A DNA stretch of 64,000 nt, from positions 32,302,001-32,366,000 of the forward strand of contig OZ365110.1 in NCBI GenBank assembly GCA_977030845.1, read 5' to 3'. Source of the stretch: Fimbriosthenelais zetlandica. Lineage: Eukaryota. A program made the translations under genes and the position numbers. How positions within the stretch are numbered: position 1 is the first letter of the stretch; each line of letters starts with the position of its first letter. The notes beneath the pieces were generated by a model, which was given only the letters and a program-made list of their open reading frames with translations, searched no databases and was not told the origin of the DNA. Shown here piece by piece: positions 10,300 through 41,423 of the stretch.

Positions 10300-11619
10300 G
10301 GAAAAAGACAAATGTAGGTCAGTTTTGACGATGGATTGGCAGTCATTTTAGGAGTGTACAGCGGAGATATATAGATGGGACTGTCGCCTAATACCCCTAT
10401 GTGAACACGGGTTGGTACCTCCATTTTCTTTTTTAAATGGCAGACACAGAGGAGTAGGAGGAATTGGAGATGGATTATCGAGGGATTAGTAGGCCTAGAA
10501 GGGGGTAGGGTTACACATCTTTCATTTATAATCATAATACGTTTAGAGGCATGGTCTTCAACATTGCAAATGTGCTCGAATTATATCAATCTCCGATAGA
10601 AGTTAAAATATAGGAGGAAATGTGCATGAATTTAATCATGGGATTCCTATCATTGCCCTTTATACCATTGAACATGTATGACTTCTATGCTGATGTTTAG
10701 GCTTACATATGTAAAATATAGGTTAGACAAGCATTAATTGTATATCAAATGCAATTAAGGAAAATTAAAGTTACAGCATTATACCCAATGCAGAATGAAT
10801 GCCAAATTTCGCTGGTGACATATGTACACATTTTAGCACAAAGGAGGATTAATTATTCAGGAGACACATGCAAGAGGTGAGTGACGGATTCGAGAGTTGA
10901 CCGAATTGAGAACCATGCCCCTCTCCAAAGTATGAAAGAGCCAAAAGAATAATTGATGTTGATCGTCATTCCGCTTTTCTGTTCAGATTGTCATTCGCTA
11001 ATGGACGGAGAGTGTAAAGGGATGAACCTCGCCGAGAGAGGTCAGGTGAAGGGTGGGGATCTCGATGGTCCATTTGTAGATCAGATTACCATTCAACAAT
11101 GGTATACAAAGACATGCATTCAAACAGGGATGTAAAGCTTCCTGGATGGGCATGCGATCACATGATTTGTATATGACACCATGGTATACTGAATGCAAAT
11201 GGCGGTCTTCTATATATGGTTAGCATGGGGGATTCCGTATTGATAATAATAAGTAGATAAAATTGGGTTATGTGCTCAAAATAAATATTCGTACCATTAG
11301 GATGGTCGTATGTGGTTCATATTTATTATGAAACACGCCCTGGCCCTTCATTATAGGTTATGTACTTAATGAATAATTTTGAAATGTCAGTAGGCCTCTA
11401 TGGACTAAATTAAATGTTATAATATTTTTATGTGGCCCCAATACTAATACTATCGGAAACGAATTAAGCGCATAATTAAGTCCAAGGGCAAATCTATGGC
11501 GTTTCATAAATGCCATAAAAAAAGTCTGGGGCCCATTGCAGAACAATAACATCATGAAATGGTCCCCTGAATTGGAGGTGGGTGAGAGAGAGTATATAGG
11601 GGAATGGTGGAGAGAGAGG

Positions 11620-26500: not shown

Positions 26501-29339
26501 TTAAAGCGGCACTGTCATGGCCGAACGGTCGTAGTTCGCGTTCTCTCCGCTTGAGGGCCGCCGCGCGGTGATGCCATCTATCGCCACTTTTTCGATCTTG
26601 GATTTACTTCCGGTATTCCCTAGCAACGCTTTGATGGACCCGCCGGGAAACTTGCAAGTTTTTTTAAGCTCACGGTAAGTGTTTTGCCAGTGTTTTATAT
26701 AATAAGGCAATACAATAATAATAATGTGTAACTGTAAGAATGGAGTTTTGGCTGACAAATGCGGGGGTTTGGGCTTCCACTTCATACTTGGTGGAGTTTG
26801 AGAGATGCTCAATGCAGTCCAGTCGTCTCGGAATGGGGGTTCTGATTTTCTGATTATCAATCACCGATGGTGAATTTTACCACAGACTTTCTAGTTTGTA
26901 ATTTTACTGAGGCCATATTTTTATATTATTGAAATGTTATGAATTTGGGAAATATAACGTTAGTACTCTTTACTAGTATTAATTTTCTGGGAGAGAATAA
27001 TAGTGAACTAGTCTTACTAGACTATTAGTATTCTACTTAGACAGGTTTATATTCGAAGTCTTATCGAAGTCTAATCAAGGATAGACTACTACTCTTACTC
27101 TATTTACAACAGTAACTCTACTATCCTTGGTCTAATTACTAAGACTAAGGCCGACCTTGTGAGCCTTGTGGCTATTCACTGCTCAGCTTTTGTCAAGCAG
27201 TTTATGCACAGACAGGTTTTGACGTTTCCAGACTAACGATCACAGACAGTCTAGATTTTATTTATTTAAAAAAACAACCCTACACACACGACTACTGGCC
27301 ACAACATGACACAACTTCAGTCTTCACGACACAAGGCTCAACTAGACTCGGAAAACATTGTTATTGCCTAGTATTTGTAGGCCTATCATTATTCTAGATC
27401 TAGATCTAAAGCCACTCATTATTTTCTGGCCGTTTTCCCACCCAGTCAGGCTAGTGCTAAGTATCAGCTCTCGAAGAACAACTTCTCGTTGTTTTCATAA
27501 AATTTGATCTCATTCGAAACTTCGATAGATATTTATGATATTGATATGGTGCATTTTTGTTCTTCAGCTATGGGACGCTTAATCGCTTATGTGTGACCCC
27601 GAGGTCAAACGGTAGTTTAGCCTAGTACACATCGTCACCAGGTAAGTGTTCTTTCATATAAAAAAAATCACAGTCACAGATCTAATATTTGAGAATAATT
27701 GGTAATATTTCCTAGATGGATATGTCTAGACTATTTACTCTTGTCTGACACTGGGGAAAGTGCCAAACTTTGATAAGATCTAGATATAGACTCTATATAG
27801 ACTTTTAGTGTTCTCAGATGTCACGGCCATAATGGGAGGGATTATTAAAAAATGATTAGATCTATTCTGAAACAAAGTAAATGCTTGTCGCGTTTTACTG
27901 CTTTTGAAAGACAGGTTTCCAGGCTCCAACACCCGACTACTGGCGTCATCTCTAGGTATATACTGTATATCACTAATAAAATGAAATAATAAGTTATTTT
28001 CTCTGACTGCTGTGTACTGTACATCAAAACCATTAGATCCTACTGAAAGTACTATTTCCTAAACTGTCATACTCAGTACGAGCAGTACTGGTCATACTCC
28101 AAATGCACATTGCCAATCTAGCTCAGAAGTTTGTCTATCCCAATTTCAAAAAAAATTTTTATTTTTTTTTATATCCATTGGACAATAAATTTTATTGGTT
28201 AGATCTAGATCTAATTATAATATATTTCCATCTAGATCTAGGACCATTTTAAAAACATATAAGCTTGACCAGCATAGGTACATATGAGATTGAGATATAT
28301 TATTGTCATTAGAAGATCATAAAAAAAAAATATAAGTTAATCCACATTATCATTTTGACACATGGTGTATTTTTGTTCCCCAGATTTGGACTTGATTTGG
28401 TTCGACCGCCAACGCACACGGCGCACCTAGACACATGGTAAGTGTTAGTTCTCATAGAAAAAAGCTATGTCAGAATAGAAGGGATAAGCTTTTTATTTGT
28501 TGCTGTCACTAGGGTAAGGCGACAAATATTGGTAAAATCCCAAGTTTCTCAGATAACATAGGAGGGAGTGAATTGTTTCCTCTGGCCCTCACCTAATCTT
28601 TACCTTTTGAATGACAAATGTGAACATTTATATACATATATTATTATAATTACATTGTATGTATCCAGGTCCCAGCTGCAGACTACTGGCATCATCCCGA
28701 AATTTATCTACCGACTACTAATGTACCGTAACCATTTTTTTTATTTTTTAGGAATTAATCCACTAATACCTCATCTGCTATCATTATGGCATTTGCTATG
28801 TATATGATTTGGTTTCTAGTAGAATAAGTTTAATTCTTTTTTCCATTCATAATGACACCTTTTTTGACAGTCAAGGCCGTAAAGAAATCGTCAAATGAAC
28901 TTTGGCTATAACAATTTGGCCAATATCTATCACCGATTTATGTTACAATCCTTACCTCTTTTCTAATTCTACAATATTATACATGGAGTCAATACCAATG
29001 AAATATTTTCACGTTGATTTGCAAGCTGTCATTTGAAAGATTTTTTTTTTCGACCAAAGGAACCCATTAGGTCATGTGTTTATGAATATTGTAGTTCTAA
29101 ATTTTTGGAGATTTTTTGGGTGATTAACGAGGAACTTTTTCCTTTGCCTTATTCTGAAACTTCACAGTAAGTGTATGGTACTATTTGTGAAAATCTAAAT
29201 CCAGATTACGTAGACGTGGCTCTTTCAATGGAATTGGTTGCTAATTAATTGTATGCTTTCATTGATTTAATTGATTTTTCGCTCTTTTGAGTGGAGTGAG
29301 AGTGGAGTGATGCATTTGGGGGCGGGAGGGAAGGGAAGG

Positions 29340-29990
29340 GAAGGGAAGGGAGTTTGATTGGAAAGTGGGTTAGGATTATGGTAGGGAAAGGGGAAGGGGG
29401 TTGGATTGGAAAGTGGGTTTGGATTATGGTAGGGAAAGGGGAAGGGGGTTGGATTGGAAAGTGGGTTTGGATTATGGTAGGGAAGGGGGAAAGGGGTTGG
29501 ATTGGAAAGTGGGTTTGGATTATGGTAGGGAAAGGGGAAGGGGGTTGGATTGGGAGGGGGAGGCGAAGTGGTTTGGATTATCATGCAGCGTTTGACATAC
29601 ATGTAAGTTTGTGTCGTAGTGCCCGGAAAATGGAGGGTTCCCTATTGCCTCGTGAACAAGTGTTATGATATGTGGAGGGGAAGGGTTTTGGAATATGGGA
29701 GGGGGGAAAGGGTTTGGATTGTGGAAGGAGGATGGGAAGAGGTTTGGATTGGTTGCAGGAAGCGGGTGGGAATGGAAAGAGTAGGGAGGGGGTGGACTTG
29801 GGGAGTTGGGATGGAATGGGTGAAGGGCGGGAGGAGAATGGTGTAGATTGAATCATATAAGTAGAAAGTAGTCTTTCATTACCAGATTTTGTGTACCTAA
29901 CATTAGACATAGGGCCACATAATAGTCTTTTCTACTTCTATGGATTGAATGGAGGAGTGGGGATGGAATGGGTGAAGGATTCGATTGATT
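29340..29990. repeat. G-rich 48-bp minisatellite (~4.5 copies) and degenerate continuation
   Basis: Unit ggtttggattatggtagggaaaggggaagggggttggattggaaagtg repeated 29354-29560; explains the periodic ORFs at 29267-29668. Confidence 0.9.
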
Positions 29991-29995
29991 GGGGG

Positions 29996-30590
29996 AATCC
30001 CAATACATGTAATAACTCACTGTTCCTTCCAGTTGTTCTAATCACAATAATGACTTACTGTTTCTTCCATTAGTTCTAATCCCAATACATGTATAATAAC
30101 TCACTGTTCCTTCCAGTTGTTCTAATCACAATAATGACTTACTGTTTCTTCCATTAGTTCTAATCCCAATACATGTAATAACTCACTGTTCCTTCCAGTT
30201 GTTCTAATCACAATAATGACTTACTGTTTCTTCCATTAGTTCTAATCCCAATACATGTAATAACTCACTGTTCCTTCCAGTTGTTCTAATCCCAATAATG
30301 ACTCACTGGTCCTTCCAGTTGTTCTAATCCCAATAATGACTCACTGTTTCTTCCAGTTGTTCTAATCCCAATACATATAATGACTCAATGTTTCTTCCAG
30401 TTGTTCTAATCCCAATAATGACTCAATGTTTCTTCCAGTTGTTCTAATCCCAATAATGACTCGCTGTTTCTTCCAGTTGTTCTAATCCCAATACATATAA
30501 TGACTCAATGTTTCTTCCAGTTGTTCTAATCCCAATAATGACTCAATGTTTCTTCCAGTTGTTCTAATCCCAATAATGACTCACTGTGTC
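29996..30590. repeat. 38/44-bp minisatellite with higher-order structure
   Basis: Monomers ttctaatcccaata(catgta)at(g/a)actcactgtt(t/c)cttccagttg, arranged as 3 dimers then 3 trimers. Confidence 0.9.
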
Positions 30591-31630
30591 CCACTGTTAT
30601 TTTTGTTATTTTACAATCCGGAGTTTCTAACCCTAATATCATTTTCCTCGTCAATTAACTCAATGTTTCCTACATTCTAATACAAGAAACACAATGTTAC
30701 ATTTTCAATACATTCATGTATCGTGCCATTTTGGTATGACAGTTGACTCAATGTTTCCTACATTATCATTACAACTGACTCAATGTTTCCTGCATTATCA
30801 TTACAATTGACTCAATTACTCAATTTTCTTCAGCTACACATAATGACTCATTTGCTGTTGTTCTGAAATAGATAATTAAGTAGGTGTACATAGTGTTTCA
30901 GAGATAAAGAGTGCAGTAAAGATACCCATTAGCCCAACCTAAGCTGATACTAACCTAAGCCTCACTGATCTTTGCATGCCACTGTACCAGATGATGTATA
31001 TTGTCTTATGGTAATGATGTAATGTAATGATGATAGGAGATCCTTTTATATGAATCTATGTCTAATCTGGCTGAAATATATCTAGGTTACAAAGTAACGC
31101 TTGTCAGACCAGAATGAGGAAGCGAGAGAGGGAGAGAGAAGGGTACAAAGAGAAGGGCGAGGGCAAAGAGACTGAGCTTGGATATTACATGGGCTTATAA
31201 AGTTAAGGTCAGAGGTCAACAGCCAATGAGGGGAAAGAGGCGGGTCCAGGCCCACAGATGCATGGTAACTGGACCCAAGACATATGACAGAATGATTAAT
31301 GACAGGTAGGGGTGTGTTAGGTATAGGAGAGGGGCGATAGGGACTATTACGTAATAGACATAGGGCCTAGTGTAGGAGCCCTCCAGGTAAAGAGGTCCGC
31401 CTGGTGGCTCTCTGATAGGGGAAGCATAGATATAGAAGGTAGAGAACAAAGGAATATGAAGGATAAAGGATTAATAATCATTATAAAACATTATAAAACA
31501 TCATAAAACATTATAGAATATAATTAAATATTATATTAGAGAGTGTTACGGCTAGGCGTAACACCACCTTAATGTGAAATTACTAGTTACATGTATGGTA
31601 TTCAAATGCAGAAATCGGCCCAACCTGCAG

Positions 31631-34600
31631 CACCCCTAAAGATCAAGAGTCAGCCGCATGTAAAAGGAGATGTAAGTAAATACATAAGGGCAATAAGAAT
31701 GATTCCTTTGTCATTTCGAGTGAAGGTTACTTTCAAATGTTTTAGAAATAAAATGTAATGCATTTTAATGCACGCCTTAATAGACATTTGTGCTATATAC
31801 ACATGGTTTATCTTAATAGTTGAAGGCATTGATATGAGTATGACACCGATCAAACCAGCCAGAGCAGCCGCAAAACGGCTTAGCATGGAGGAGATAAGAG
31901 ACCATCGAGACAGTGTACCGGTATCCCCGATTATACCCTTCATGACACCCAGTGCCAACGAAGGTAAAATTCTTATATACGTAATAAAAATAATTACCAT
32001 ATTTGCCGGAGTATAAACTACACCTGACTATAAACCGCACCCCCTGGCCGCTCAGGTTAAAATCCATATATAACCCGTTGTTTCTATATATAGTAATCCA
32101 TATAAAAAGCGACAATGCATGATATTTTTGAACATGGTCATCTGACTTAATTCCAGAAGTTGTATACTTAACACCAGCCAAAGGGGGCATACCTGACAAG
32201 GACAAGGACTCACCGTTGTCATATTCTCCTCAGTTATATGAGTCAGATGACGAATTGTAAGTAAAAGAAACATTTGTAACTCTCTTCCCCCACCTCCACC
32301 ACCTAACATGTCTGCCTATCTCTCTCACAATTTCCCTCCCTCAACTCCGATCAGGTTTTCAAATTGGACATTTATTGGTTTGTTCCAGTTTACCTGACAT
32401 AACGGATATTGTTTTCAACAATGAAGATGAGGAAGTAGGCCTACACGAACACGAAGAGGGGGATGCAAAACATTTTTGCAAAGTTCAAATGTCAAAGGAG
32501 GAGGCGATCAATGCCAAGAAATCTTTAGTTTTTAATGATTGTCTATTGATTTTATTGAAATGCGCTGTCGGCGAGACGTGCTACAAGTGTCAAACCCCCA
32601 TTAAGTTTAAACCGACGAAGATAGGCACATGCCTCCTTGTGAAGTGGTCGTGCCCTAAGTCGGCGAAGGGCGAGAGCCACAGCAATGGTTGCTGGGCGTC
32701 CCAGCCGTACATCGCAGGGATGTACGCTGGGAACATCCTGACCTCCACTTCACTCATCCTGTCGGGGAATAATTATGCAAAGGTGGCGTTGATGGCAGAC
32801 TTCCTAAATCTGAACTTCCTATCTGAATCAACCCATTACAGGTATGGATCTCAATTGATAACATAATTTATATGGATCTAGATTAGTTCATTAAACTTGC
32901 CTCACGTTTTCATTTCTCAGAATTTTTAAGCATTTATATCATTTGATTTTAGGATACAGTCCAGGTACGCCCAGCCAGCTGTAAATGAGTACTGGGAGAC
33001 TACCCAAGCCCATCTCCTCCAGGACCTCCAAGGTCCCGTTGTACTGGCGGGAGATGGGCGAAATGATTCCCCAGGACATAAGGCCAAATACCTGACGTAT
33101 AGCTTGATGGATGTCGAAACGTCTAAAATATTATCCATGGCCGTGGTGGACTGCAGGGAGACCGGGCTAAACAGTGTTGTTATGGAAAAAGTTGGATTTA
33201 CCCGCGCTATAGCCCATATACAAAGCAAGGTGCAAGTGACTGAAGTCGTCACGGACGCCCACCCACAAATAATGGCTCTGATGAGTAAGTAAGACCTAAA
33301 ATCACTTGATTTGTAGCGCCATGATTCTTGATACCTGAGTGAGTTATCGAGATCATCTCAATCACTTTGGCTGATATAAATTTGACTTATTATTTAGAGA
33401 AAGATGTCAAATACCAGAATATGGTTCACCAGTGTGACGTCTGGCACGCTAGCAAGAACATCACCAAGAAGCTAGTTGCTGTGAGTACAAAGCTCGATGG
33501 AATCAGGACATTTTTGCCCCCCCACCGCCGTTACCACGTTTTGTTTAAATTTTCTTCCTATCTCCTATTATATACTGTTGTTGAAGACACCAGTGTTCCA
33601 GCTTGCTTCTCTTTAACCGTTAGAGGGTTATGTAGCAATCATTAAAATACAGGGGAGGGCATGGAGTTATAAATATTACAATATATAAATCATACATTTT
33701 TATTAGTCATATTCTAAAATTATGTCTTATGAACTTAAGTAAAATCATGTGTGACTCTTATGGAAAGCTAGGTTCATTGATTTCCAGTCAACCCCACTAC
33801 ATATCTGTATTCTTCTCGTAACCTATTTTCAATATGCTGTCAACATTTCACCCCAAAGCAGAATCATTTACTACCCATAAATTTCTCCTATTAAAGGCTG
33901 GAAAGGAACGTGGAATGGGAGACCTGACGGCGTGGATCCCATCCATAAAAAACCATCTCTGGTACTGCGCACGGACATGTGGCGGGGATTCAGACAAACT
34001 CAGGGTGAGCCAATACAAAATATAATAATGGTATAACAATATCAACAGAAAATATAACAGCATATTCCAGCTCTAGTGAATTTCTTCTATTATTCGGTTC
34101 CCAAGGTTTGTGATTGATTATATGGCCCCTTTCTATTCCTGTACATGGATTGAAATTTCAGAGAAATTGGGCAACTTGTCTGTCTCACGTCTGCAACAAA
34201 CACACGTGGCTGGACTTTACTGGGCGCACCAATGGGAGGTGCAACCATCCCATTCCCCTTCCCCCCGATGAACAGCAGAAGCCGTGGTTGGAGCCGGGTT
34301 CCAAAGTACATAAAAGGTTGACAGAGATTCTGCTCGACAAGCAACTATTAAAGAAAATGGAATATCTGAGGAACTTCAGGTAAATTGAGAAACTGAAGCC
34401 ATTAACACAGTACAAAGTAATAAACAAAGGAATCTATCAGGGGAGGGTTTCATAACAATGTCTTAGTGTATGAGAAAGGCCCCAGGTCGTACATATTAAT
34501 TAACAATGACTTTGAATGTTCAGTAAAGGCATCAACATTCCTTGCTCTTGTTCTTCAGACACACTGGACAACTAGAGCTTTTTCACAGCCATCTCCTGAT

Positions 34601-35490
34601 GTATTGCCCAAAGAGGCTCGCCTTCAAGTAAGTTAAACAGAAAAATGAAATACATGCATTGACATTCAGTAGACTGATAATAAATCAGAGTCTTTGCGGA
34701 ACACATACTTAATTTGCTGAATTCCAAATGTTTCAGATATCCGAATTATCTGATGCGGAACCAATTAGCAGCCCTTGATTTCAACCACCATGTTGATAGG
34801 CAGAATGCCACCGACAAAGAGGGAGAATTAAGGTGAGGATTACTATAGTTACTAATGGACATTATATTCAATGGCAAGTTACATCTTGTAGATTCGCTTA
34901 TTCTTGAAGTTTAATATCAAAGACATACACATAAAGCACATGTAAAAACTTTTAAGAACAGATTTATTTACATCAAAATTTAATTCGCCATTTTATCCAT
35001 AATGATAATGCAAATGTGGTTCAATGTACATTTCTAATTATATAGTACAGTAAGTTACATCGTTTTTCCTGAGTTATATAAATTCGTTTCACAGTTACTC
35101 TTTACATAAGGTACATGATCTGTATTCATCTCTACATGTACTTATTTATTGGTACACTTCTCTTACAATACATAATTGTACTGTTTGAAACCATGTTAAT
35201 CAGGTATTACTGTCCTGTTTCCCATTAGGTACAGATGCTACTACAGTAAGGCGACAAAGAACTGGAGCGCGGTGCCTGCCAAGGAGGCTAAGTCATACAC
35301 GTACATCAAGGAGCTCATACAATGTGTCTATAGCAAGAGGGAGGAGGAGCATGGAGAAGTCCCCATTGCCACGCCACATGGACTACATGACAACGACCCA
35401 TCCCGACTGCAACCCACCATTGCAGCAGTCCCCAAACCCCCCAAAGCTGTACTGGTTGAACGCCACCAATCCCGATTCCTTAACAATTAA
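31631..35490 (+). CDS. Kolobok DDE transposase (at least 634 aa; 5' exons unresolved)
   Basis: Exons 31631-31671, 31820-31963, 32157-32256, 32389-32841, 32953-33284, 33398-33480, 33897-34004, 34162-34379, 34559-34627, 34737-34832, 35229-35490. All are GT-AG, phase-consistent and stop-free. Motifs: GDGRNDSPGH (D at 33053), VVTDAH (D at 33254), HQCDVWH, NHLWYC, HTGQLELFH (E at 34575), LAALDFNHH, C-terminal HQSRF. Confidence 0.9.
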
Positions 35491-35642
35491 AGTACCCTCC
35501 CTACCTCCGAAGCTGGTTGATAGGCCCAGCACCAATCCCGATTCCTTAACAATTAAAGTACCCTCCCTACCTCCCAAGCTGGTTGATAGGCCCAGCACCA
35601 ATCCCGATTCCTTAACAATTAAAGTACCCTCCCTCCCTCCCA
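35464..35642 (+). repeat. 66-bp tandem triplication spanning the transposase stop codon
   Basis: caccaatcccgattccttaacaattaaagtaccctccc... starts at 35464, 35530 and 35596. Confidence 0.9.
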
Positions 35643-36344
35643 CCGAGATAAATGTAAATAATTAATGTAAATAATATGTAAATAATATCCCCATGCCTCA
35701 CTCGACTCGTGATGAACCAGTTTTAACACGGACAATTTCACGCATATCTCCAGTCAAGTGGGGAGGGGGGTGGTGAAGTTAACAAATTGTCTTTAATTTT
35801 ATAGTAGATCTAGTTCAGTTCAGAAATAGTTTCCTCATAAAAATCATTACAATTAAAATTTTATATTGGTACATTTTTCTTTGGTATCAAAGAAAGAGTT
35901 TTACTTGTTTACATGTGTATAGTTTAAATTATAAGAAATAATTGTCAGAAGCTGTATTCTGGACTTGGGAAAGGGGGACGGGTAGAATAAGTCATCACAT
36001 ATGTGTGAGTGAGTGAGCGCATGTCAGAGAGATTGATTGAATGCCTGCATGACTGAGATTAAACTAGTATAAATTTAAAAAAAAGATATCAAAACTTCTC
36101 TTGTTTTGACTTGATCATACTACATTGTATGTGTACTGAACTGGGTTGACATGCGAGTTGGAAAGGGAACTGGAATTATAATACTCAGTTTTCCTCAGCG
36201 AATGTATATTCGGAATAGTGACAAAAGTATGACCAGGCAGGATCAGCCAGGGCTAAATGTATAATACCCAACCCTTGCTCATGGTATACATGGTATACAT
36301 AACAATTTGCCCCCTGTTGTACATGAATGCCTTTTAGATATACA

Positions 36345-36500
36345 GGCTAACTGACATATGCCATGTGCATGAAGCATGATACCTCAGTGAGGCAGCACTA
36401 TAAAAGAGCATAGGGCTCACTGTCACAAGTAGGCACGACCATGATTATGATATAACTAAAACATTGTTGAAAGTGACCGTAAACCCCATACAATACAATC
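36345..36500 (+). mobile_element. 3' half of a MESC-like SINE inside the transposon
   Basis: tgatacctcagtgaggcagcacta...ctcactgtcacaagtaggcac...ttgttgaaagtgaccgtaaacccca(tacaa)n matches the reverse complement of the 60674-60990 copy. Confidence 0.7.
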
Positions 36501-37179
36501 ACTTGTAGCGCTCAATAGTCCTATGCGACTTTAGACTCATTTACTGAAAATACATCACATATGTTTGGGCAGACACAACAGGGTAGTGAATAGGCTTATA
36601 GACATAGCAGCTGGCATGGCGTTAAATCACCATTCATTCAACATGGTAGTTATGTAAGTTAGTAGCTGTGAAGCTTGCACAATTGGTCTTATATTCCATA
36701 AAGTAACTCATCTAAATGACCCAGTCTCCTGAGAATATTAGTTAACTATTATTTTCATACATTAATTATTTTAGAATCAGGATATAACAGTATAGCATTG
36801 TGTTAGGGCCGTCATAATTTTTTCTTCACTCAAAACCTTTTAGCTAATCGTTTTTCATCTCGAAAGGAAAAAACATATTTAAAACATTACTTGCCATATT
36901 TAAGATGCTATCCGGGAATACAATTATATTACTAGTTCTAACATACATAACCTATACTGTACATATAAGTAATGCATAAAGGAATGACGGTCGTAATATT
37001 ACACAATTATCTGTATCACTATCAACTTGCTAAATTGTTTTTAATAAATCTTACAATGTTTCTAATCACAACGTACTGTTTCATGGAAATGATTCCCCTA
37101 AGGCTCAATATAAATGTGTGTTATGTTTCCAGGAGACTGTCTCATGTGGTCTCTTACTTTGTGAGCGAAATTATTCCGC

Positions 37180-38948
37180 TCACAAAGTAAGACGATCAGG
37201 ACGTTTAAAACCTGTATATACACCATCAACAGATGGATAGTGCTGTCTGACAAGACAGACAACACAGCTTGGAATGACTACCCTGTTGTGTCTCCCCAAA
37301 TGACCAAACCGCCATAAAACAAACTGGCGGTAGGCCATGTGACGGAGAGTGTCATTACTATCTGGACTGTCATTAGTAACGAAAACTTCGTTGTGGTTAA
37401 TGACAGCCAGATGTAGGCACTCTCGGGATAGAACCAGGTGATTGATAGGGCCAGCACTGGTGACAGAGATGCAGGGACCTGGTCGCATCCTGTGGCGGCA
37501 GCATAGTTCTTCGTCTGGGGTGGGCATGGGGCGGCACCTGCCACAATTACACCATACTGGTGCCTCCTCCTCCTGGGGTGGGCGGGGGGTCAGGACATGT
37601 GCCATGAGGTCGGGGTACATGGCGACGGTTCTCTCGATGATGCTAATAAGGGAGTCACGTGACATGAGCCTTAGCTGGAAAAGAGGGAAATCAAATGTCT
37701 GCTTAAGTAATAGCAGACTTTCTCCACATTTGGTACAAAAGCTTCTGAAACGAAAATATGTAAAACACTAGCGTATCAAAGATGCAAGTTGTCCATTCAA
37801 TCAGAATGCCCTTAATTAATAATAGGCCTATATTCATGAATGAAAATCTTTAGATCTGTTTATAATTCTTACTTCGATATTTGGTGGACAGTTGCCCGAC
37901 TCCACACGCCTTTCTCTTGGCCCATCTTCTGCCATAGGGATATCTTGACTATCCTGAGGAGGAAAAACCAGTTAAATATCTGGGTTACGCCTACCACTAT
38001 GAAATAGTTAGCCAGAGTACTAGGGCGATTTAAAAAACAAATTTTTCACATACACATAGAAGCCACAATATTTGTCAGAGCACATGTGATATTACATACC
38101 TGTACAATAAAGGACGCCTCGCTCTGGTCTTCAGCAGCATGCTGCAGACTGGTGTTTGCCTCACTATCGACGGTGAACGGCGGGTCGTCCCCAAAGGCCA
38201 CTATGAGTCCCTGCCGTGAAATAATTAGACTTAAGAGTTACTGCTGTTCATAATTTATGATATGTAGGCTTTTGGAATTGAGAAAAGAGATAAGGCCACA
38301 TTTTTTAATTGGTTGGTTCTCGAACAAAATAGGTCTAAATATTTTTGGGGCGGGCGGGAAAAAAAACAATTTTTTTTTATTCACAGTAGTCAGCTTTCAA
38401 AAAGAAAAAAGTCGGCGGGGGGAAATAATTATTGTTTAATATAAATGTATGACTTTTTTTTTAAATCTTCATTAAAAGTATATATAAACTGCTAAAAACC
38501 ATTGATCTGTAGGTCTATGATATAAACATTTTTAAACTTCTGAGGTAGGAAGGTAAAAAAAAAAAAATTTTCGTTTTGCCTGGATCTTACGTCGGCGGAT
38601 CTGCTAATGCAAAAAAAAATATTTTGTCTATTTTTTAAAAATTTGTGTAGGCGGGTCCGCGAACCAAACAATAAAAAAAATGTGGCCTAATGAAGGATTT
38701 TGGAAAGAAATACATGTGGAAAAGTGGCACACCTCTTCCTCGCTCTCTTCCCCTGAGCAGTCCTCTTCTTCCCAATCCCTGTTCCTCCCTCTTCCGAGTC
38801 TATTGGAGCATTTCATTTTCCCCGTCCCACACTGACACATCGACGAGCAAAAAGTTCCATTTGCCAGGCAAGGGCAACCCCCTCTCTTATTTGCGCCACG
38901 GTTACACAGATTTTTGCAGTGACATATCGTTGGGTCACTTGACGCCAT
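37180..38948 (-). CDS. Kolobok accessory protein (300 aa): N-terminal 9-Cys CXC domain, acidic linker, C-terminal P2X7-ballast-like (ZCD/'CCHH') domain
   Basis: Exons 38948-38733, 38210-38100, 37953-37873, 37674-37180, all phase 0, total 903 nt. N-terminus CHCKNLC..CPC......C...CQC......CSN. C-terminus WCNCGRC..EELCCR..PGPCI..LVLSR..RHMAYRQFVLWRFG..IPSC..YTGFK. Confidence 0.88.
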
Positions 38949-41423
38949 CACTAGTTTTTCTGAAAGCAAGAAAAAACACTGGTCATCACCAAACATGATA
39001 CTTATCATATTTAACTTCATAAGTTGAGCAGAGCATGCACATTATAGGATGAATCCCCTAGTTATTTCTAACACTAGGCCTAAATGATTACCTCTATTAT
39101 ACAATAGGCCTACTTATCGAGTTTTACTCTGAGATAATAATACATGTAAATACTATATATATTTATAACATAGGTGAGAACACAATTATATTGGATATCT
39201 CACTATACCTACATATTCCTCTGAATTTTACACTCGCATGGGAAGCTAGGGCCCTGAGTGGCATAGGCCTCTATATAGCCCTCATCCTTACCACAGGACC
39301 CAGTAATTTTTATGTTTTTAAAACCAACGGGAGCTTAAACTCAGAATTGAGTTTTCTATCCTGTGTCCTTTATCAATTCTATCAATAACAGAATATTATT
39401 TTGGCCACTTTCCGATCAGAATATCAAATGTGAGCGAGTTTTTGTTTGTCAGATATTATTTGTCAGAAATGGAATATTTTATTTATTTGCACCCTAATAT
39501 GAGGATAAAATATTTATTTTTATCATCCCTTGTGTATTTTTTTTTTTTCACCTATACTCCCAAGGAAATGATTTATTAAAAAAAAAACACTACTTAGCTA
39601 ACAATCATGGAAAACCTAACCAAGGCTAAAACTTGGTTAGAAAACACATCATAATCAAAGATTGTGAGAATTAACCACAACATTGCCATATATAGAGGGT
39701 ACCACCCGATTTTTCTCTTCGTTTTCTTCTTGAAACCCCATACATGTTTATGACTATTCACTACCAGTAGGCTTAATTGTGGGAGTCATAAGCATAGATA
39801 TATTGACAAGGAAATGCTATGGGCCTATATACCTACAGGCCTTCGACTTAGCCTCTAGGTCGAGGCCAACATATTATTTTAATGGGCACAGGCCTAGGCC
39901 TACCGGTAGGCCTATCGTAAATCATATTAGGCCTATAGGCTAAAATCTACTTATCAAGCTTATCAAGACTATAGAACCTACCAATAAAATGTATAGCTAG
40001 CCTCTGATTTTGGGATAAGCTCGATTATTAACTTAGGCCTATAGGCTAGGCCTACCTATATTTTTTTTAATTTTATTAATAGGCCAGCATTGTGCATATT
40101 TATTTTTAAGATCTTTTTGAAATATTTTACACCGGCCTACTATTTAGGGGCTAAGATCTAGACCCTATTATTTCTGGAAAATATATTTTTTTTAAATTGG
40201 CTGACACATTTTCTCTCATACGAGGTGTTTAAAAATTGAAATAATTATAGGCCTGGATAAAAATAAATAGTGGAAATTCTTATGATAAAAAGGTTCAAAA
40301 CGTGAATAGTTCGTCACTACCAAATAATAGTTGTCCCAGAACGTGGCTGCGGGGCTACAACGGGTTACAAGAGGCGGGGGCTTGTTTCAAAGTAAATCAG
40401 GTCTGGCTCAGTCCCTGTCCTCGCCCAAATTATCTGACAGTGATATCATTTATTTAATTTCTTTTGGGAGTCAAGACTGACATTTTATTAGACGAGGAAA
40501 ATATTGGAGAGATTGGGGAACTTTTTATCCGTCATTAGATATTGTATTTTTTAGTTAATTTCAAATTTATTGACCACCGTAAATTATTACATCGCCAGAA
40601 ACCCCCCACGTCGTGTGCGTCAGCACCAAAGTCATAGAACTAGTTGATCAAGTGGAATCGGTTTACAAGGGAAACAAGTGGATTTATATACGTTTCCGTA
40701 TATAGATATAAAGAAAAAACTGCAATCAGTGCAGGTAGGCATATATTACGTATGAATATTCAAATATAAATCGTTGAATATGTCTATAGATCTAACTATT
40801 CCTAGACCTATGTTTAGGTTCTGTCTCTGCCTGACAAAAGCAACGGACATGACACATGACCTAGATAGGGCAGGCTAGATCATCATCATAGATGAAGTCA
40901 TCTCATGTTTAGAATAATAGGCCTACATGCCTAGCCCAAGCCCTAATCCAAGATAAGATAGGAAAAATAAATTGACAATATTTTCTGGAAACAACGGGCA
41001 TGTTTTGGCCTTTGTCTCTCACTCTGACTGCGCCTTGCAGGTGCTCGTGCATAGGTCTTTTTGGGTGGAAAACTGAATGGTGTTCAGTACAATAAATATT
41101 TTCTCCCAAGAAAAATAATCACAAAATTGAATTCAGTCTGACATCGGCATTGAGATCTAACGTTAGTTTTCTAAAGGAATTTACTTACCACTGTACTTGT
41201 TGGGTTGAACGGGTCCTACGGGGTAGCGCTAGTAGTGGTCAGTGACACTGTCCATCGGAAAACGTCAAACGCGGGAGCTGGCACCGGGTGACGTCCGGCG
41301 GTAACCTAGGTCACGACGGAAGTCACGTGACCGTCGGCTCGCTTAAGTGGGAACATAGACCGTCAAGCGGTCTATGGTGGGAAGCTTAACGCGCTGCGGC
41401 GATCGGTGACAGTGCCGCTTTAA

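What the first reader, a model, noticed from the sequence alone, without database searches (positions are those of the whole stretch)
37180..38948. Transposon accessory protein fuses a CXC domain to a P2X7-ballast-like Zn/guanine-nucleotide module
Seen: the 300-aa spliced product has C-x-C-x3-C-x9-C-x-C-x6-C-x3-C-x-C-x6-C-x-N, an acidic linker, then WCNCGRC/EELCCR/LVLSR/RHMAYR/WRFG/PSC/YTGFK. Known: these C-terminal motifs match the P2X7 cytoplasmic ballast as I recall it (WCQCGSC, EELCCR, LVLSR, RHCAYR, WRFG, PSC, YSGFK), which binds two Zn and GDP/GTP. Nine-Cys CXC domains bind DNA in MSL2 and LIN54/tesmin, and P-element transposase needs GTP. The link between Kolobok second proteins and the ballast has been noted before; the CXC fusion and its function are what I cannot place. 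Inference: a two-component transposition system in which a separate DNA-binding, guanine-nucleotide-sensing subunit regulates or targets the transposase, and a living model for the ancestor of the P2X7 tail.
Basis: partly seen in the sequence, partly recalled or inferred. Interest (0 to 1): 0.8.

Follow-up and report, generated by a model that had tools for sequence, protein, structure and literature searches.

The report
Kolobok transposon helper protein, CXC-plus-ballast type
This is the second gene (KolX) of an intact Kolobok DNA transposon, already known as the likely source of the P2X7 receptor's cytoplasmic tail; here it also carries an undescribed nine-cysteine CXC-like zinc module at its start, and the same pairing is found in sea cucumber and abalone.

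Summary
A four-exon gene on the minus strand (38948..37180, GT-AG introns, all phase 0) encodes exactly 300 aa.

**Ballast.** Exon 4 is a strong P2X7 ballast: Pfam P2RX7_C at 1.9e-37, P2X7 PDB sequences at 1e-23, and P2X7 chains as the only significant fold matches.

**Transposon.** The gene lies inside a TTAA-flanked element (26505-41419) with 13-bp perfect terminal inverted repeats. It converges on a transposase that matches Kolobok-1_XT motif for motif. It is therefore a KolX protein. The KolX-ballast link was published by Kojima and Bao in 2022.

**CXC module.** Exon 1 matches no Pfam family and no PDB sequence. It does define a conserved family (47 hits), with nine near-invariant Cys plus Asn. 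Every structural neighbour of its model is a CXC, AWS or pre-SET zinc-cluster domain (EZH2, LIN54, MSL2, tesmin, KIF4), but the scores are weak.

**Conserved architecture.** CXC, then an acidic linker, then the ballast recurs in:
- a 47-56% identical paralogue in this genome;
- two unidentified assemblies;
- *Haliotis rubra*;
- an intact *Apostichopus japonicus* RefSeq protein.

In three of these loci a convergent Kolobok transposase lies beside it.

**Limits.** DNA binding, nucleotide binding and any effect on transposition are untested. Only 3 of the 5 rat GDP-contact residues are kept. No RNA run was available to confirm splicing.

**Verdict.** This is a new variant of a known kind, of moderate interest. 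First-stage notes list other Kolobok elements in this genome.

The parts
38733..38948 (-). Exon 1 (72 aa). It holds the conserved start Met, a basic nine-Cys plus Asn CXC-like module (residues 9-49, net charge +9 over residues 1-57), and the beginning of an acidic tail.
   Evidence: Family alignment A3: the nine Cys are kept in at least 43 of 46 sequences and N49 in 45 of 46. The AF2 model has pLDDT 76.5, and its neighbours are only CXC, AWS or pre-SET domains.
38211..38732 (-). Intron 1 (GT..AG). It carries a nested ~400-bp MITE-like repeat at 38290-38691 with ~36-bp terminal inverted repeats.
   Evidence: dozens of genomic copies at 78-87% identity; inverted termini at 38290-38325 and 38655-38691.
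38100..38210 (-). Exon 2 (37 aa). Acidic linker with a conserved hVAF...N-x-S-L-Q-x-AAE motif.
   Evidence: The same motif lies between the CXC and ballast exons in L024, L025, L039, L041, L028 and L032.
37873..37953 (-). Exon 3 (27 aa). Linker.
   Evidence: strong polypyrimidine acceptor, GTAAGA donor, phase 0.
37180..37674 (-). Exon 4 (164 aa plus stop). It holds the pre-ballast helices and the P2X7-type ballast or zinc-coordinating cysteine domain: WCNCGRC, ELCCR...GPC, IPSC, and RH...R.
   Evidence: Pfam PF20478 at E 1.9e-37. P2X7 PDB sequences at E 1e-23, about 39% identity. The AF2 model has pLDDT 82.9, and its top 14 PDB matches are all P2X7 (E 1e-7 to 4e-6) followed by a gap to E>2.
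37152..37192 (.). A 41-nt palindrome (19-20 bp stem) spanning the stop codon and the first 3'-UTR bases.
   Evidence: It is present in the two 98% copies but absent from paralogues and orthologues.
26501..26517 (+). Left end of the host element: TTAA target-site duplication followed by the 13-bp TIR AGCGGCACTGTCA.
   Evidence: The 5'-AG...CT-3' termini and TTAA duplication fit Kolobok as described in PMC9587614.
41407..41423 (+). Right end of the host element: TIR TGACAGTGCCGCT followed by TTAA.
   Evidence: It is the perfect reverse complement of the left TIR.
32375..35490 (+). Exons of the Kolobok DDD/E transposase, convergent with KolX. Motifs: VVLAGDGRNDSPGH, VVTDAH, QCDVWHASKN, IKNHLWYC, HTGQLELFHS.
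   Evidence: The motifs match Kolobok-1_XT 1p one for one in Data S5 of PMC9587614. Homologous, convergent transposases lie next to CXC-KolX in L039, L044 and L048.

Best explanation
**Identity (about 0.9).** This is the KolX gene of a full-length Kol0-type Kolobok DNA transposon (26505-41419). It belongs to a KolX subtype conserved across phyla. In that subtype a basic, nine-cysteine CXC-like module that probably holds three zinc ions is joined by a strongly acidic linker to a P2X7-type ballast domain with seven conserved zinc-ligand cysteines.

**Shown here**
- The gene model and its two domains.
- Its place in the transposon.
- Retention of CXC, linker and ballast together through deep divergence.
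- Physical linkage to a convergent Kolobok transposase in four independent lineages.

**Mechanism (inferred, about 0.35-0.4).** KolX is a trans-acting transposition cofactor, comparable to the Myb-like second protein of PIF/Harbinger elements.
- The basic zinc-cluster arm binds DNA or chromatin, either the element's ends or its target.
- The acidic linker may mask that arm.
- The ballast is a zinc-stabilised body that contacts the transposase. It may hold a guanine nucleotide through the invariant R111/H112/R143 (P2X7 R546/H547/R578) and the KolX-specific invariant R131.
For: - **Gene model and motifs:**
- **Ballast:** Pfam 129.5 bits; P2X7 PDB sequences at 1e-23; P2X7 chains are the only significant fold matches.
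- **Element:** perfect 13-bp TIRs plus TTAA. The transposase motifs match Kolobok-1_XT.
- **Published link:** the KolX-ballast link is in PMC9587614.
- **CXC family:** 47 hits, with nine Cys plus Asn near-invariant.
- **CXC fold neighbours:** only 11 of 48,161 chains reach Z>=2, and all 11 are CXC, AWS or pre-SET. The Foldseek top 30 in PDB and in Swiss-Prot models are all EZH1/2, CLF, LIN54, tesmin, KIF4 or TCX5.
- **Architecture conserved:** L024 and L025 in this genome; L039 and L041; Haliotis L043 and L044; Apostichopus L048 and the intact RefSeq protein P0092.
- **Convergent transposase alongside:** L039, L044, L048.
- **Same module on a transposase-like protein:** in Holothuria it sits at the N-terminus of a hAT-type protein, where DNA-binding domains normally sit.
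- **Charge:** +9 for the CXC module and -21 for the linker.
- **Invariant residues:** R111, Y115, R131, and R143 in 31 of 32 sequences.
Against: - No RNA evidence for the splice junctions. No sequencing run was listed.
- The CXC module matches no Pfam CXC family and no PDB sequence.
- The fold matches are individually weak: Z at most 3.5, E at least 0.1.
- EZH2 CXC, AWS and pre-SET clusters are mainly structural rather than DNA-reading. This rests on my own knowledge.
- The position of the LIN54 minor-groove Tyr before the central C-x-C is Gly or Ala here (the LIN54 detail is from memory).
- Two of the five rat GDP ligands are never basic in this clade (V139 and S148).
- Many KolX or ZCD proteins lack the CXC module. 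Examples are Stylophora, Mytilus and tick models and nanor and Xenopus proteins (PMC7016195). It therefore cannot be essential to every Kolobok.
- The two other 98% copies are broken, and their changes in exon 4 run about 7-9 nonsynonymous to 2 synonymous. That looks like neutral decay, so selection is visible only across families.
Confidence: 0.55

Rival explanations
1. KolX is a regulator or host-interface factor rather than a DNA-binding subunit. On this view the CXC-like cluster is a structural or protein-binding zinc knot, as in EZH2 CXC or in AWS and pre-SET domains. It would recruit or deflect host chromatin or silencing machinery, or hold the transposase in check.
For: The best structural neighbours are EZH2 CXC and the AWS or pre-SET clusters of SET-domain enzymes. 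The LIN54-type Tyr is absent. The long acidic linker is typical of histone- or protein-binding tails. Not every KolX has the module.
Against: The module carries net charge +9, with conserved K/R at positions 12, 17, 21, 22, 44 and 50. That suits nucleic-acid binding. In Holothuria it occupies the usual DNA-binding position of a hAT-type protein. LIN54 and MSL2 CXC, which are DNA binders, are also among the neighbours.
Confidence: 0.25
2. One reading: the ballast is a guanine-nucleotide sensor that gates transposition, by analogy with the GTP requirement of P-element transposase.
For: R546, H547, Y550 and R578 equivalents are conserved. R111 and Y115 are invariant, H112 is kept in 20 of 32 sequences and R143 in 31 of 32. 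The predicted fold superposes on GDP-binding P2X7 ballasts. An extra invariant Arg (R131) lies in the same region.
Against: The R574 and K583 equivalents are V and S throughout the clade. Rump et al. already state that GDP binding outside mammals is unproven (PMC7016195). The P-element parallel rests only on memory and analogy.
Confidence: 0.15
3. The CXC exon is not part of the ballast mRNA. It would be a separate small ORF or an unused upstream exon, and the functional product would start at a Met in exon 3 or 4.
For: There is no RNA evidence. In-frame Met codons exist in exon 3 and at residue 4 of exon 4. One Haliotis RefSeq model starts downstream of the CXC exon (P0089). CXC-only loci exist (L029, L046, L047).
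Against: All junctions are canonical and phase 0. The exon order CXC, linker, ballast is kept at 31-56% identity across at least three phylum-level lineages. The RefSeq protein P0092 joins both domains in one intact 265-aa product. Haliotis XP_046546214 joins the CXC exon to the linker and last exons.
Confidence: 0.07
4. It is a host gene that happens to lie near a transposase, or a domesticated KolX such as zebrafish nanor, and not a transposon gene.
For: RefSeq calls its relatives 'P2X purinoceptor 7-like'. Domesticated KolX derivatives exist (nanor and P2X7; PMC9587614).
Against: It lies inside the TIR and TTAA boundaries. Two further copies at 96-98% identity sit on other chromosomes and share the same right-hand repeat boundary. 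The convergent Kolobok transposase neighbour recurs in three other lineages.
Confidence: 0.03

Closest known systems
KolX, the second protein of Kol0-lineage Kolobok transposons (Kojima and Bao 2022, Mob DNA, PMC9587614)
   Same: It is encoded inside a TTAA-inserting Kolobok element beside a DDD/E transposase. Its C-terminal domain is homologous to the P2X7 ballast, with the seven conserved Cys.
   Different: The paper aligns and discusses only the ballast part and never mentions a CXC or cysteine-rich N-terminus. This protein adds a conserved nine-Cys module and an acidic linker. Its ballast lacks the insertion after the CC motif seen in the XT, BF, CTe and Aqu KolX proteins. It keeps RH, like P2X7 and Kolobok-1_SKow.
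P2X7 receptor cytoplasmic ballast (Pfam P2RX7_C; PDB 6u9v, 9e3m)
   Same: About 39% identity over 129 residues. The three Cys clusters are the same. The predicted fold is the same: TM by query about 0.59, and 2.8-3.6 A rmsd over about 128 columns in the best rows. R546, H547, Y550 and R578 are kept.
   Different: It is a soluble 300-aa protein with no P2X channel or C-cys anchor. R574 is V and K583 is S. It has an invariant G-x-G-N-R motif that P2X7 lacks.
CXC zinc-cluster domains: LIN54/tesmin (PDB 5fd3), MSL2 CXC (2lua), EZH2 CXC, and AWS or pre-SET clusters
   Same: It has nine Cys. Its second half, C-x-C-x6-C-x3-C-x-C...C-x-N, has the same spacing as the tesmin/TSO1 CXC consensus as I recall it. 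Every structural neighbour in three libraries is one of these domains.
   Different: There is no hit to Pfam TCR or MSL2-CXC, nor to any PDB sequence. The first half has different spacing (C-x-C-x3-C-x9). There is a single copy, not the LIN54 tandem pair. No Tyr precedes the central C-x-C. Signature residues of its own are N13, R17, K/R21-22, P26 and G41-T42.
Myb-like second protein of PIF/Harbinger transposons (functional analogy only; from my own knowledge)
   Same: A DDE transposon with two genes, in which a separate small protein with a DNA-binding-type domain accompanies the transposase.
   Different: The two are unrelated in sequence and fold. The cofactor role is demonstrated for Harbinger but is only inferred here.

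Membership tests
KolX (Kol0 Kolobok accessory protein) | Encoded inside an element with a TTAA target-site duplication and 5'-RR...YY-3' termini | tested here: met
   TTAA|AGCGGCACTGTCA ... TGACAGTGCCGCT|TTAA at 26501-26517 and 41407-41423. The criterion comes from PMC9587614.
KolX (Kol0 Kolobok accessory protein) | Co-encoded Kolobok DDD/E transposase | tested here: met
   Exon translations at 32375-35490 match Kolobok-1_XT 1p motif for motif: GDGxxDSPGH, TDxH, QxDVWH, NHLWxC, HTGxLExFHS. Homologous transposases lie next to CXC-KolX in L039, L044 and L048. This is a motif-level comparison; no Kolobok HMM was available.
KolX (Kol0 Kolobok accessory protein) | C-terminal similarity to P2X7 residues 476-595 | tested here: met
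   It aligns to P2X7 residues 467-594 at E 1e-23. Pfam PF20478 scores 129.5 bits.
P2X7 ballast / ZCD (Pfam PF20478) | Profile score above the gathering threshold | tested here: met
   129.5 bits against a cut-off of 23.5, covering profile positions 72-192.
P2X7 ballast / ZCD (Pfam PF20478) | Three zinc-ligand Cys clusters: PxWCxCxxC, LCCR..GxC and (L/I/V)PSC | tested here: met
   PVWCNCGRC, ELCCRHRMRPGPC and IPSC are all present. The Cys columns are kept in 28-32 of 32 relatives. The consensus is from PMC7016195.
P2X7 ballast / ZCD (Pfam PF20478) | Ballast fold | tested here: met
   The AF2 model has pLDDT 82.9. Its top 14 PDB matches are all P2X7, at probability 1.00 and E 1e-7 to 4e-6. The next match is at E 2.3.
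P2X7 ballast / ZCD (Pfam PF20478) | Guanine-nucleotide contact residues R546, H547, R574, R578 and K583 (rat) | tested here: inconclusive
   The window protein has R, H, V, R and S at these positions, so three of five are kept. Binding itself cannot be tested with these tools.
P2X7 receptor | Ballast fused to a P2X channel with a C-cys anchor | tested here: not met
   The protein is 300 aa and its other exons give no Pfam P2X hit. It is a relative of the tail, not a receptor.
CXC domain (Pfam TCR PF03638, MSL2-CXC PF16682) | Match to the family profile | tested here: not met
   There is no Pfam hit at E<=1 for exon 1. None of 46 relatives hits at E<=0.01. P0092 has no hit in its CXC part. No PDB sequence hits at E<=10. 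The Atlas feature search shows only weak leads to TCR and MSL2-CXC clusters (0.76-0.80).
CXC domain (Pfam TCR PF03638, MSL2-CXC PF16682) | Nine Cys in CXC spacing ending in C-x-N | tested here: met
   C9, C11, C15, C25, C27, C34, C38, C40 and C47 are each kept in at least 43 of 46 sequences, and N49 in 45 of 46. The second-half spacing equals the tesmin consensus, which I recalled from memory. The first half differs.
CXC domain (Pfam TCR PF03638, MSL2-CXC PF16682) | Zn3Cys9 cluster fold | tested here: inconclusive
   All 11 chains with Z>=2 out of 48,161 are CXC, AWS or pre-SET: EZH2 3.5, LIN54 3.4, MSL2 2.2. The Foldseek top 30 in PDB and in Swiss-Prot models are all CXC-type. The exclusivity is striking, but every score is below the usual significance level. 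The model has pLDDT 76.5 and contains no metal.
CXC domain (Pfam TCR PF03638, MSL2-CXC PF16682) | Binds three zinc ions and binds DNA | not testable with these tools
   This needs metal analysis and EMSA or SELEX on the recombinant module.

The most novel reading that the evidence does not exclude
The CXC-like module is the DNA- or chromatin-targeting arm of a two-subunit Kolobok transpososome, and the ballast is a nucleotide-gated adaptor to the transposase. In addition, this P2X7-like, RH-containing, insertion-free CXC-KolX clade of deuterostome and lophotrochozoan Koloboks would be the direct source of the vertebrate P2X7 tail, which was captured without its CXC exon. That would give the ballast, whose role in P2X7 is still unclear, an ancestral biochemical function that can be assayed.
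Probability: 0.15. Interest if true: 0.75.

Novelty: new variant of a known kind. Interest (0 to 1): 0.5.

Why it matters
The function of the P2X7 ballast is an open question, and its transposon origin (KolX) was proposed only in 2022.

This element offers an apparently intact two-gene Kolobok whose KolX is unusually P2X7-like. It also shows that in one widespread KolX lineage the ballast has travelled for a long time with a specific, still unnamed CXC-like zinc module. That module is also found on a hAT-type protein.

This gives a concrete and testable hypothesis for what the ballast did before P2X7 captured it: it acted as a partner of a DNA- or chromatin-binding arm in transposition.

It also defines a new domain family for annotation. 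Relatives are at present labelled 'P2X purinoceptor 7-like', 'MEGF10' or 'salivary glue protein', and these names are misleading.

Tried and rejected
- **RNA support for the splice junctions.** Two searches for sequencing runs listed nothing.
- **First protein word search with the ballast exon.** It returned only single-exon ORF fragments and short models, which say nothing about architecture.
- **Metagenome locus scan.** The scan with A1 returned one partial, uninformative locus (L045).
- **Sequence tests of the CXC module.** Pfam, PDB sequences and the 46 relatives all gave no hit.
- **CXC-only loci.** L046 and L047 have no ballast within 7 kb. L029, L036 and L037 are stop-containing CXC fragments. 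The module is therefore not always linked to a ballast.
- **THAP exon.** No convincing THAP-type exon turned up among the ORFs read at the left end of the element. This was not pursued.
- **McCarthy et al. 2019 (PMC7053488).** The paper is not held. The GDP-contact residues were taken from Rump et al. instead.
- **Stop-codon palindrome.** It is specific to this family and not conserved in orthologues, so it is not treated as part of the mechanism.
- **Complex prediction.** Not used. No binding claim is made, and the spliced transposase has no reference.
- **Full-length fold.** The 300-aa spliced protein could not be folded whole because it has no reference. The two domains were folded separately.
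Full report
**1.

On the minus strand a four-exon gene runs from the ATG at 38948 to the TGA at 37180-37182.
- Exon 1: 38733-38948 (72 aa).
- Exon 2: 38100-38210 (37 aa).
- Exon 3: 37873-37953 (27 aa).
- Exon 4: 37183-37674 (164 aa).

All three introns are GT..AG and phase 0. Two acceptors have good polypyrimidine tracts, and two donors are close to consensus.

Residues 9-49 read C-x-C-x3-C-x9-C-x-C-x6-C-x3-C-x-C-x6-C-x-N. Residues 1-57 carry net charge +9 and residues 58-136 carry -21. All the quoted C-terminal motifs are in exon 4. The N runs in the window lie elsewhere.

**2. The C-terminal domain is a true P2X7-type ballast.**

- Exon 4 hits Pfam P2RX7_C at E 1.9e-37, 129.5 bits against a cut-off of 23.5.
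- It aligns to residues 467-594 of human, rat and mouse P2X7 at E about 1e-23. I counted about 39% identity from that alignment.
- An AlphaFold model built on 32 relatives has pLDDT 82.9. Its 14 best PDB matches are all P2X7 chains (probability 1.00, E 1e-7 to 4e-6). The next match is at E 2.3.
- The three zinc-ligand cysteine clusters defined by Rump et al. (PMC7016195) are all present and near-invariant among relatives.
- Of the five rat GDP-contact residues, R546, H547 and R578 are kept (R111, H112, R143). R574 and K583 are V and S, here and throughout the clade.
- KolX-type ballasts also have an invariant G-x-G-N-R arginine (R131) that P2X7 lacks.

**3. It is a transposon gene, and the transposon is a Kolobok.**

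- The gene lies inside an element bounded by TTAA|AGCGGCACTGTCA (26501-26517) and TGACAGTGCCGCT|TTAA (41407-41423). These are a perfect 13-bp TIR with 5'-AG...CT-3' termini and a TTAA duplication. That is the Kolobok signature given by Kojima and Bao (PMC9587614). The boundaries match an earlier first-stage note, and I verified them.
- On the plus strand, converging on KolX, open exon segments between 32375 and 35490 read VVLAGDGRNDSPGH, VVTDAH, QCDVWHASKN, IKNHLWYC and HTGQLELFHS..PKR. These match Kolobok-1_XT 1p motif for motif in that paper's Data S5.
- Two more copies of the KolX region, at 96-99% identity, lie on other chromosomes. Both are damaged: one has a frameshift or stop in exon 1 and indels in exon 2, and the other has lost exons 2-3 to a 14-kb interruption. 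Their exon 4 changes run 7-9 nonsynonymous to 2 synonymous, which looks like neutral decay.
- The window copy is the only intact one seen.

**4. What was already known.**

[quoted passage not shown] They argued that P2X7 arose by capture of a KolX, with zebrafish nanor as another domesticate.

That paper aligns only the ballast and never mentions a CXC or cysteine-rich N-terminus. [quoted passage not shown] In the searchable library, no other paper uses 'KolX' for a transposon protein, and none combines Kolobok with 'CXC domain'.

**5. The N-terminal module.**

By sequence it belongs to no described family.
- No Pfam hit at E<=1.
- No PDB sequence hit at E<=10.
- None of 46 relatives hits any Pfam family at E<=0.01.

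It is nevertheless a real, conserved domain.
- A four-sequence profile found 47 proteins at E<=1e-3 among 1.84 billion.
- In the 46-sequence alignment all nine Cys are kept in at least 43 sequences. N13, R/K17, K/R21-22, P26, G41, T42, K44, N49 and R/K50 are also conserved.
- Named members come from sea cucumbers, a sea star, abalones and a coral.

Its AlphaFold model (pLDDT 76.5) has weak but strikingly uniform neighbours.
- A search of 48,161 representative chains that does not use Foldseek gave only 11 chains at Z>=2. All 11 are zinc-cluster domains of the CXC, AWS or pre-SET class: EZH2 CXC 3.5, LIN54 tesmin 3.4, NSD2/3, SETD2/Set2, SUVH6 and MSL2 CXC 2.2.
- The Foldseek top 30 in PDB are all EZH1/2 or LIN54.
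- The top 30 Swiss-Prot models are all EZH/CLF/MEDEA, KIF4 cysteine-rich domain, tesmin or TCX5.

I therefore accept 'CXC-like' as a fold class and reject sequence-family membership. The Tyr that LIN54 uses in the minor groove, as I recall it, has no counterpart. The residue before the central C-P-C is Gly or Ala.

**6. Is the CXC exon really part of the ballast gene?**

Direct RNA evidence could not be obtained, because no run was listed. The comparative evidence is strong.
- **(a) Paralogue in this genome.** A family on C11 and C19 keeps the CXC exon (56% identity), an exon-2-like hVAF...NxSLQxAAE segment and the ballast exon (47% identity), in the same order and strand within about 1.7 kb.
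- **(b) Foreign assemblies.** Two unidentified assemblies do the same (L039 and L041).
- **(c) *Haliotis rubra*.** A RefSeq model joins the CXC exon to two linker exons and to the last exon, giving four exons as here. That copy has a frameshift inside the ballast exon. A sister copy has the ballast in frame but lacks the CXC exon.
- **(d) *Apostichopus japonicus*.** The RefSeq protein XP-type 'P2X purinoceptor 7-like' (P0092, 265 aa) carries the CXC module, the acidic linker, the pre-ballast helix and the ballast intact in one product. It is 44% identical to the window protein in the CXC part and 31% in the ballast.
- **(e) Transposase neighbour.** In L039, L044 and L048 a homologous Kolobok transposase lies immediately downstream on the opposite strand. 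This is the same convergent layout as in the window.

The fusion is therefore an old, conserved KolX subtype and not a peculiarity of this locus. It is not universal. Coral, mussel and tick ballast proteins, vertebrate nanor and the Xenopus proteins lack the module.

**7. A hint about function.**

In *Holothuria leucospilota* the same module sits at the N-terminus of a 903-aa protein. Residues 330-903 of that protein are a ZMYM1/FAM200-type hAT transposase-like body: Atlas features 0.95, and structure TM 0.82 over 561 residues. That is the position where hAT proteins usually carry their DNA-binding zinc finger.

Taken together with the +9 charge, and with LIN54 and MSL2 among the neighbours, this favours a DNA- or chromatin-binding role. 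It is inference only.

**8. Most likely mechanism.**

- **Shown:** identity, architecture, conservation, and linkage to the transposase.
- **Inferred (about 0.35-0.4):** KolX is a trans-acting cofactor of Kolobok transposition. The basic zinc-cluster arm binds the element's ends or target chromatin. The acidic linker may mask it. The ballast is the body that contacts the transposase and may hold a guanine nucleotide.
- **Closest functional analogue:** the Myb-like second protein of PIF/Harbinger (from my own knowledge).

**9. Verdict.**

The ballast-Kolobok link is already known.

The new element is a conserved CXC-like module on one KolX lineage, which defines a domain family missing from Pfam. 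This intact element also carries a very P2X7-like ballast. It is a new variant of a known kind, with interest about 0.5.

First-stage notes list other Kolobok elements elsewhere in this genome. I did not examine them.

Noticed in passing
window 38290-38691: A ~400-bp MITE-like repeat with ~36-bp terminal inverted repeats is nested in intron 1 of KolX. Dozens of copies at 78-87% identity lie across the genome.
   Followed up: partly
window 37152-37192: A near-perfect 41-nt palindrome (19-20 bp stem) spans the KolX stop codon. It is present in the two 98% copies but absent after the stop codon in paralogues and orthologues. Its role is unknown.
   Followed up: partly
window 40196-41049: An ~850-bp dispersed repeat (many copies at about 87%) is nested between the KolX 5' region and the right TIR.
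   Followed up: no
window 41268-41419: Both 98% copies (on C14 and C13) stop matching at 41268, which is 151 bp inside the right TIR of the window element. The reason is unexplained. It could be truncation, an insertion, or a different end.
   Followed up: no
window 29267-30850: The left part of the element contains tandem repeats, seen as Pro-rich and Gly/Trp-rich repeated ORFs on both strands. BLAST against a partial copy on C14 gives multi-register matches.
   Followed up: no
window 35380-35640: About three tandem copies of a ~22-aa unit (STNPDSLTIKVPSLPPKLVDRP) lie just beyond the last homologous transposase segment.
   Followed up: no
window 36564-36587 vs 37277-37300: A 24-nt stretch of the ballast-coding sequence is repeated in inverted orientation (96% complementary) about 700 bp downstream of the gene.
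   Followed up: no
P0046 (Holothuria leucospilota KAJ8031512.1; locus L042): The same CXC-like module is fused to the N-terminus of a 903-aa ZMYM1/FAM200-type hAT transposase-like protein that also has BED-like fingers.
   Followed up: partly
P0027 and P0080 (Acropora muricata XP_067017289 and XP_067017288): These proteins are made of at least ten tandem ~85-aa repeats, each holding one CXC-like module. They are annotated as 'multiple EGF-like domains protein 10/6', which looks like a misannotation.
   Followed up: no
alignment A4, exon-4 residue 131: An invariant Arg within a G-x-G-N-R-V-V-I-P-S-C motif is kept in all 32 KolX-type ballasts, but it corresponds to Phe566 in P2X7. It is a candidate KolX-specific functional residue.
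   Followed up: partly
L043 (Haliotis rubra) about 10757-10766; L048 (Apostichopus japonicus) about 8848: Individual CXC-KolX copies in other genomes carry a frameshift inside the ballast exon. Their annotated proteins (XP_046546214, PIK58274) therefore end in out-of-frame sequence.
   Followed up: partly
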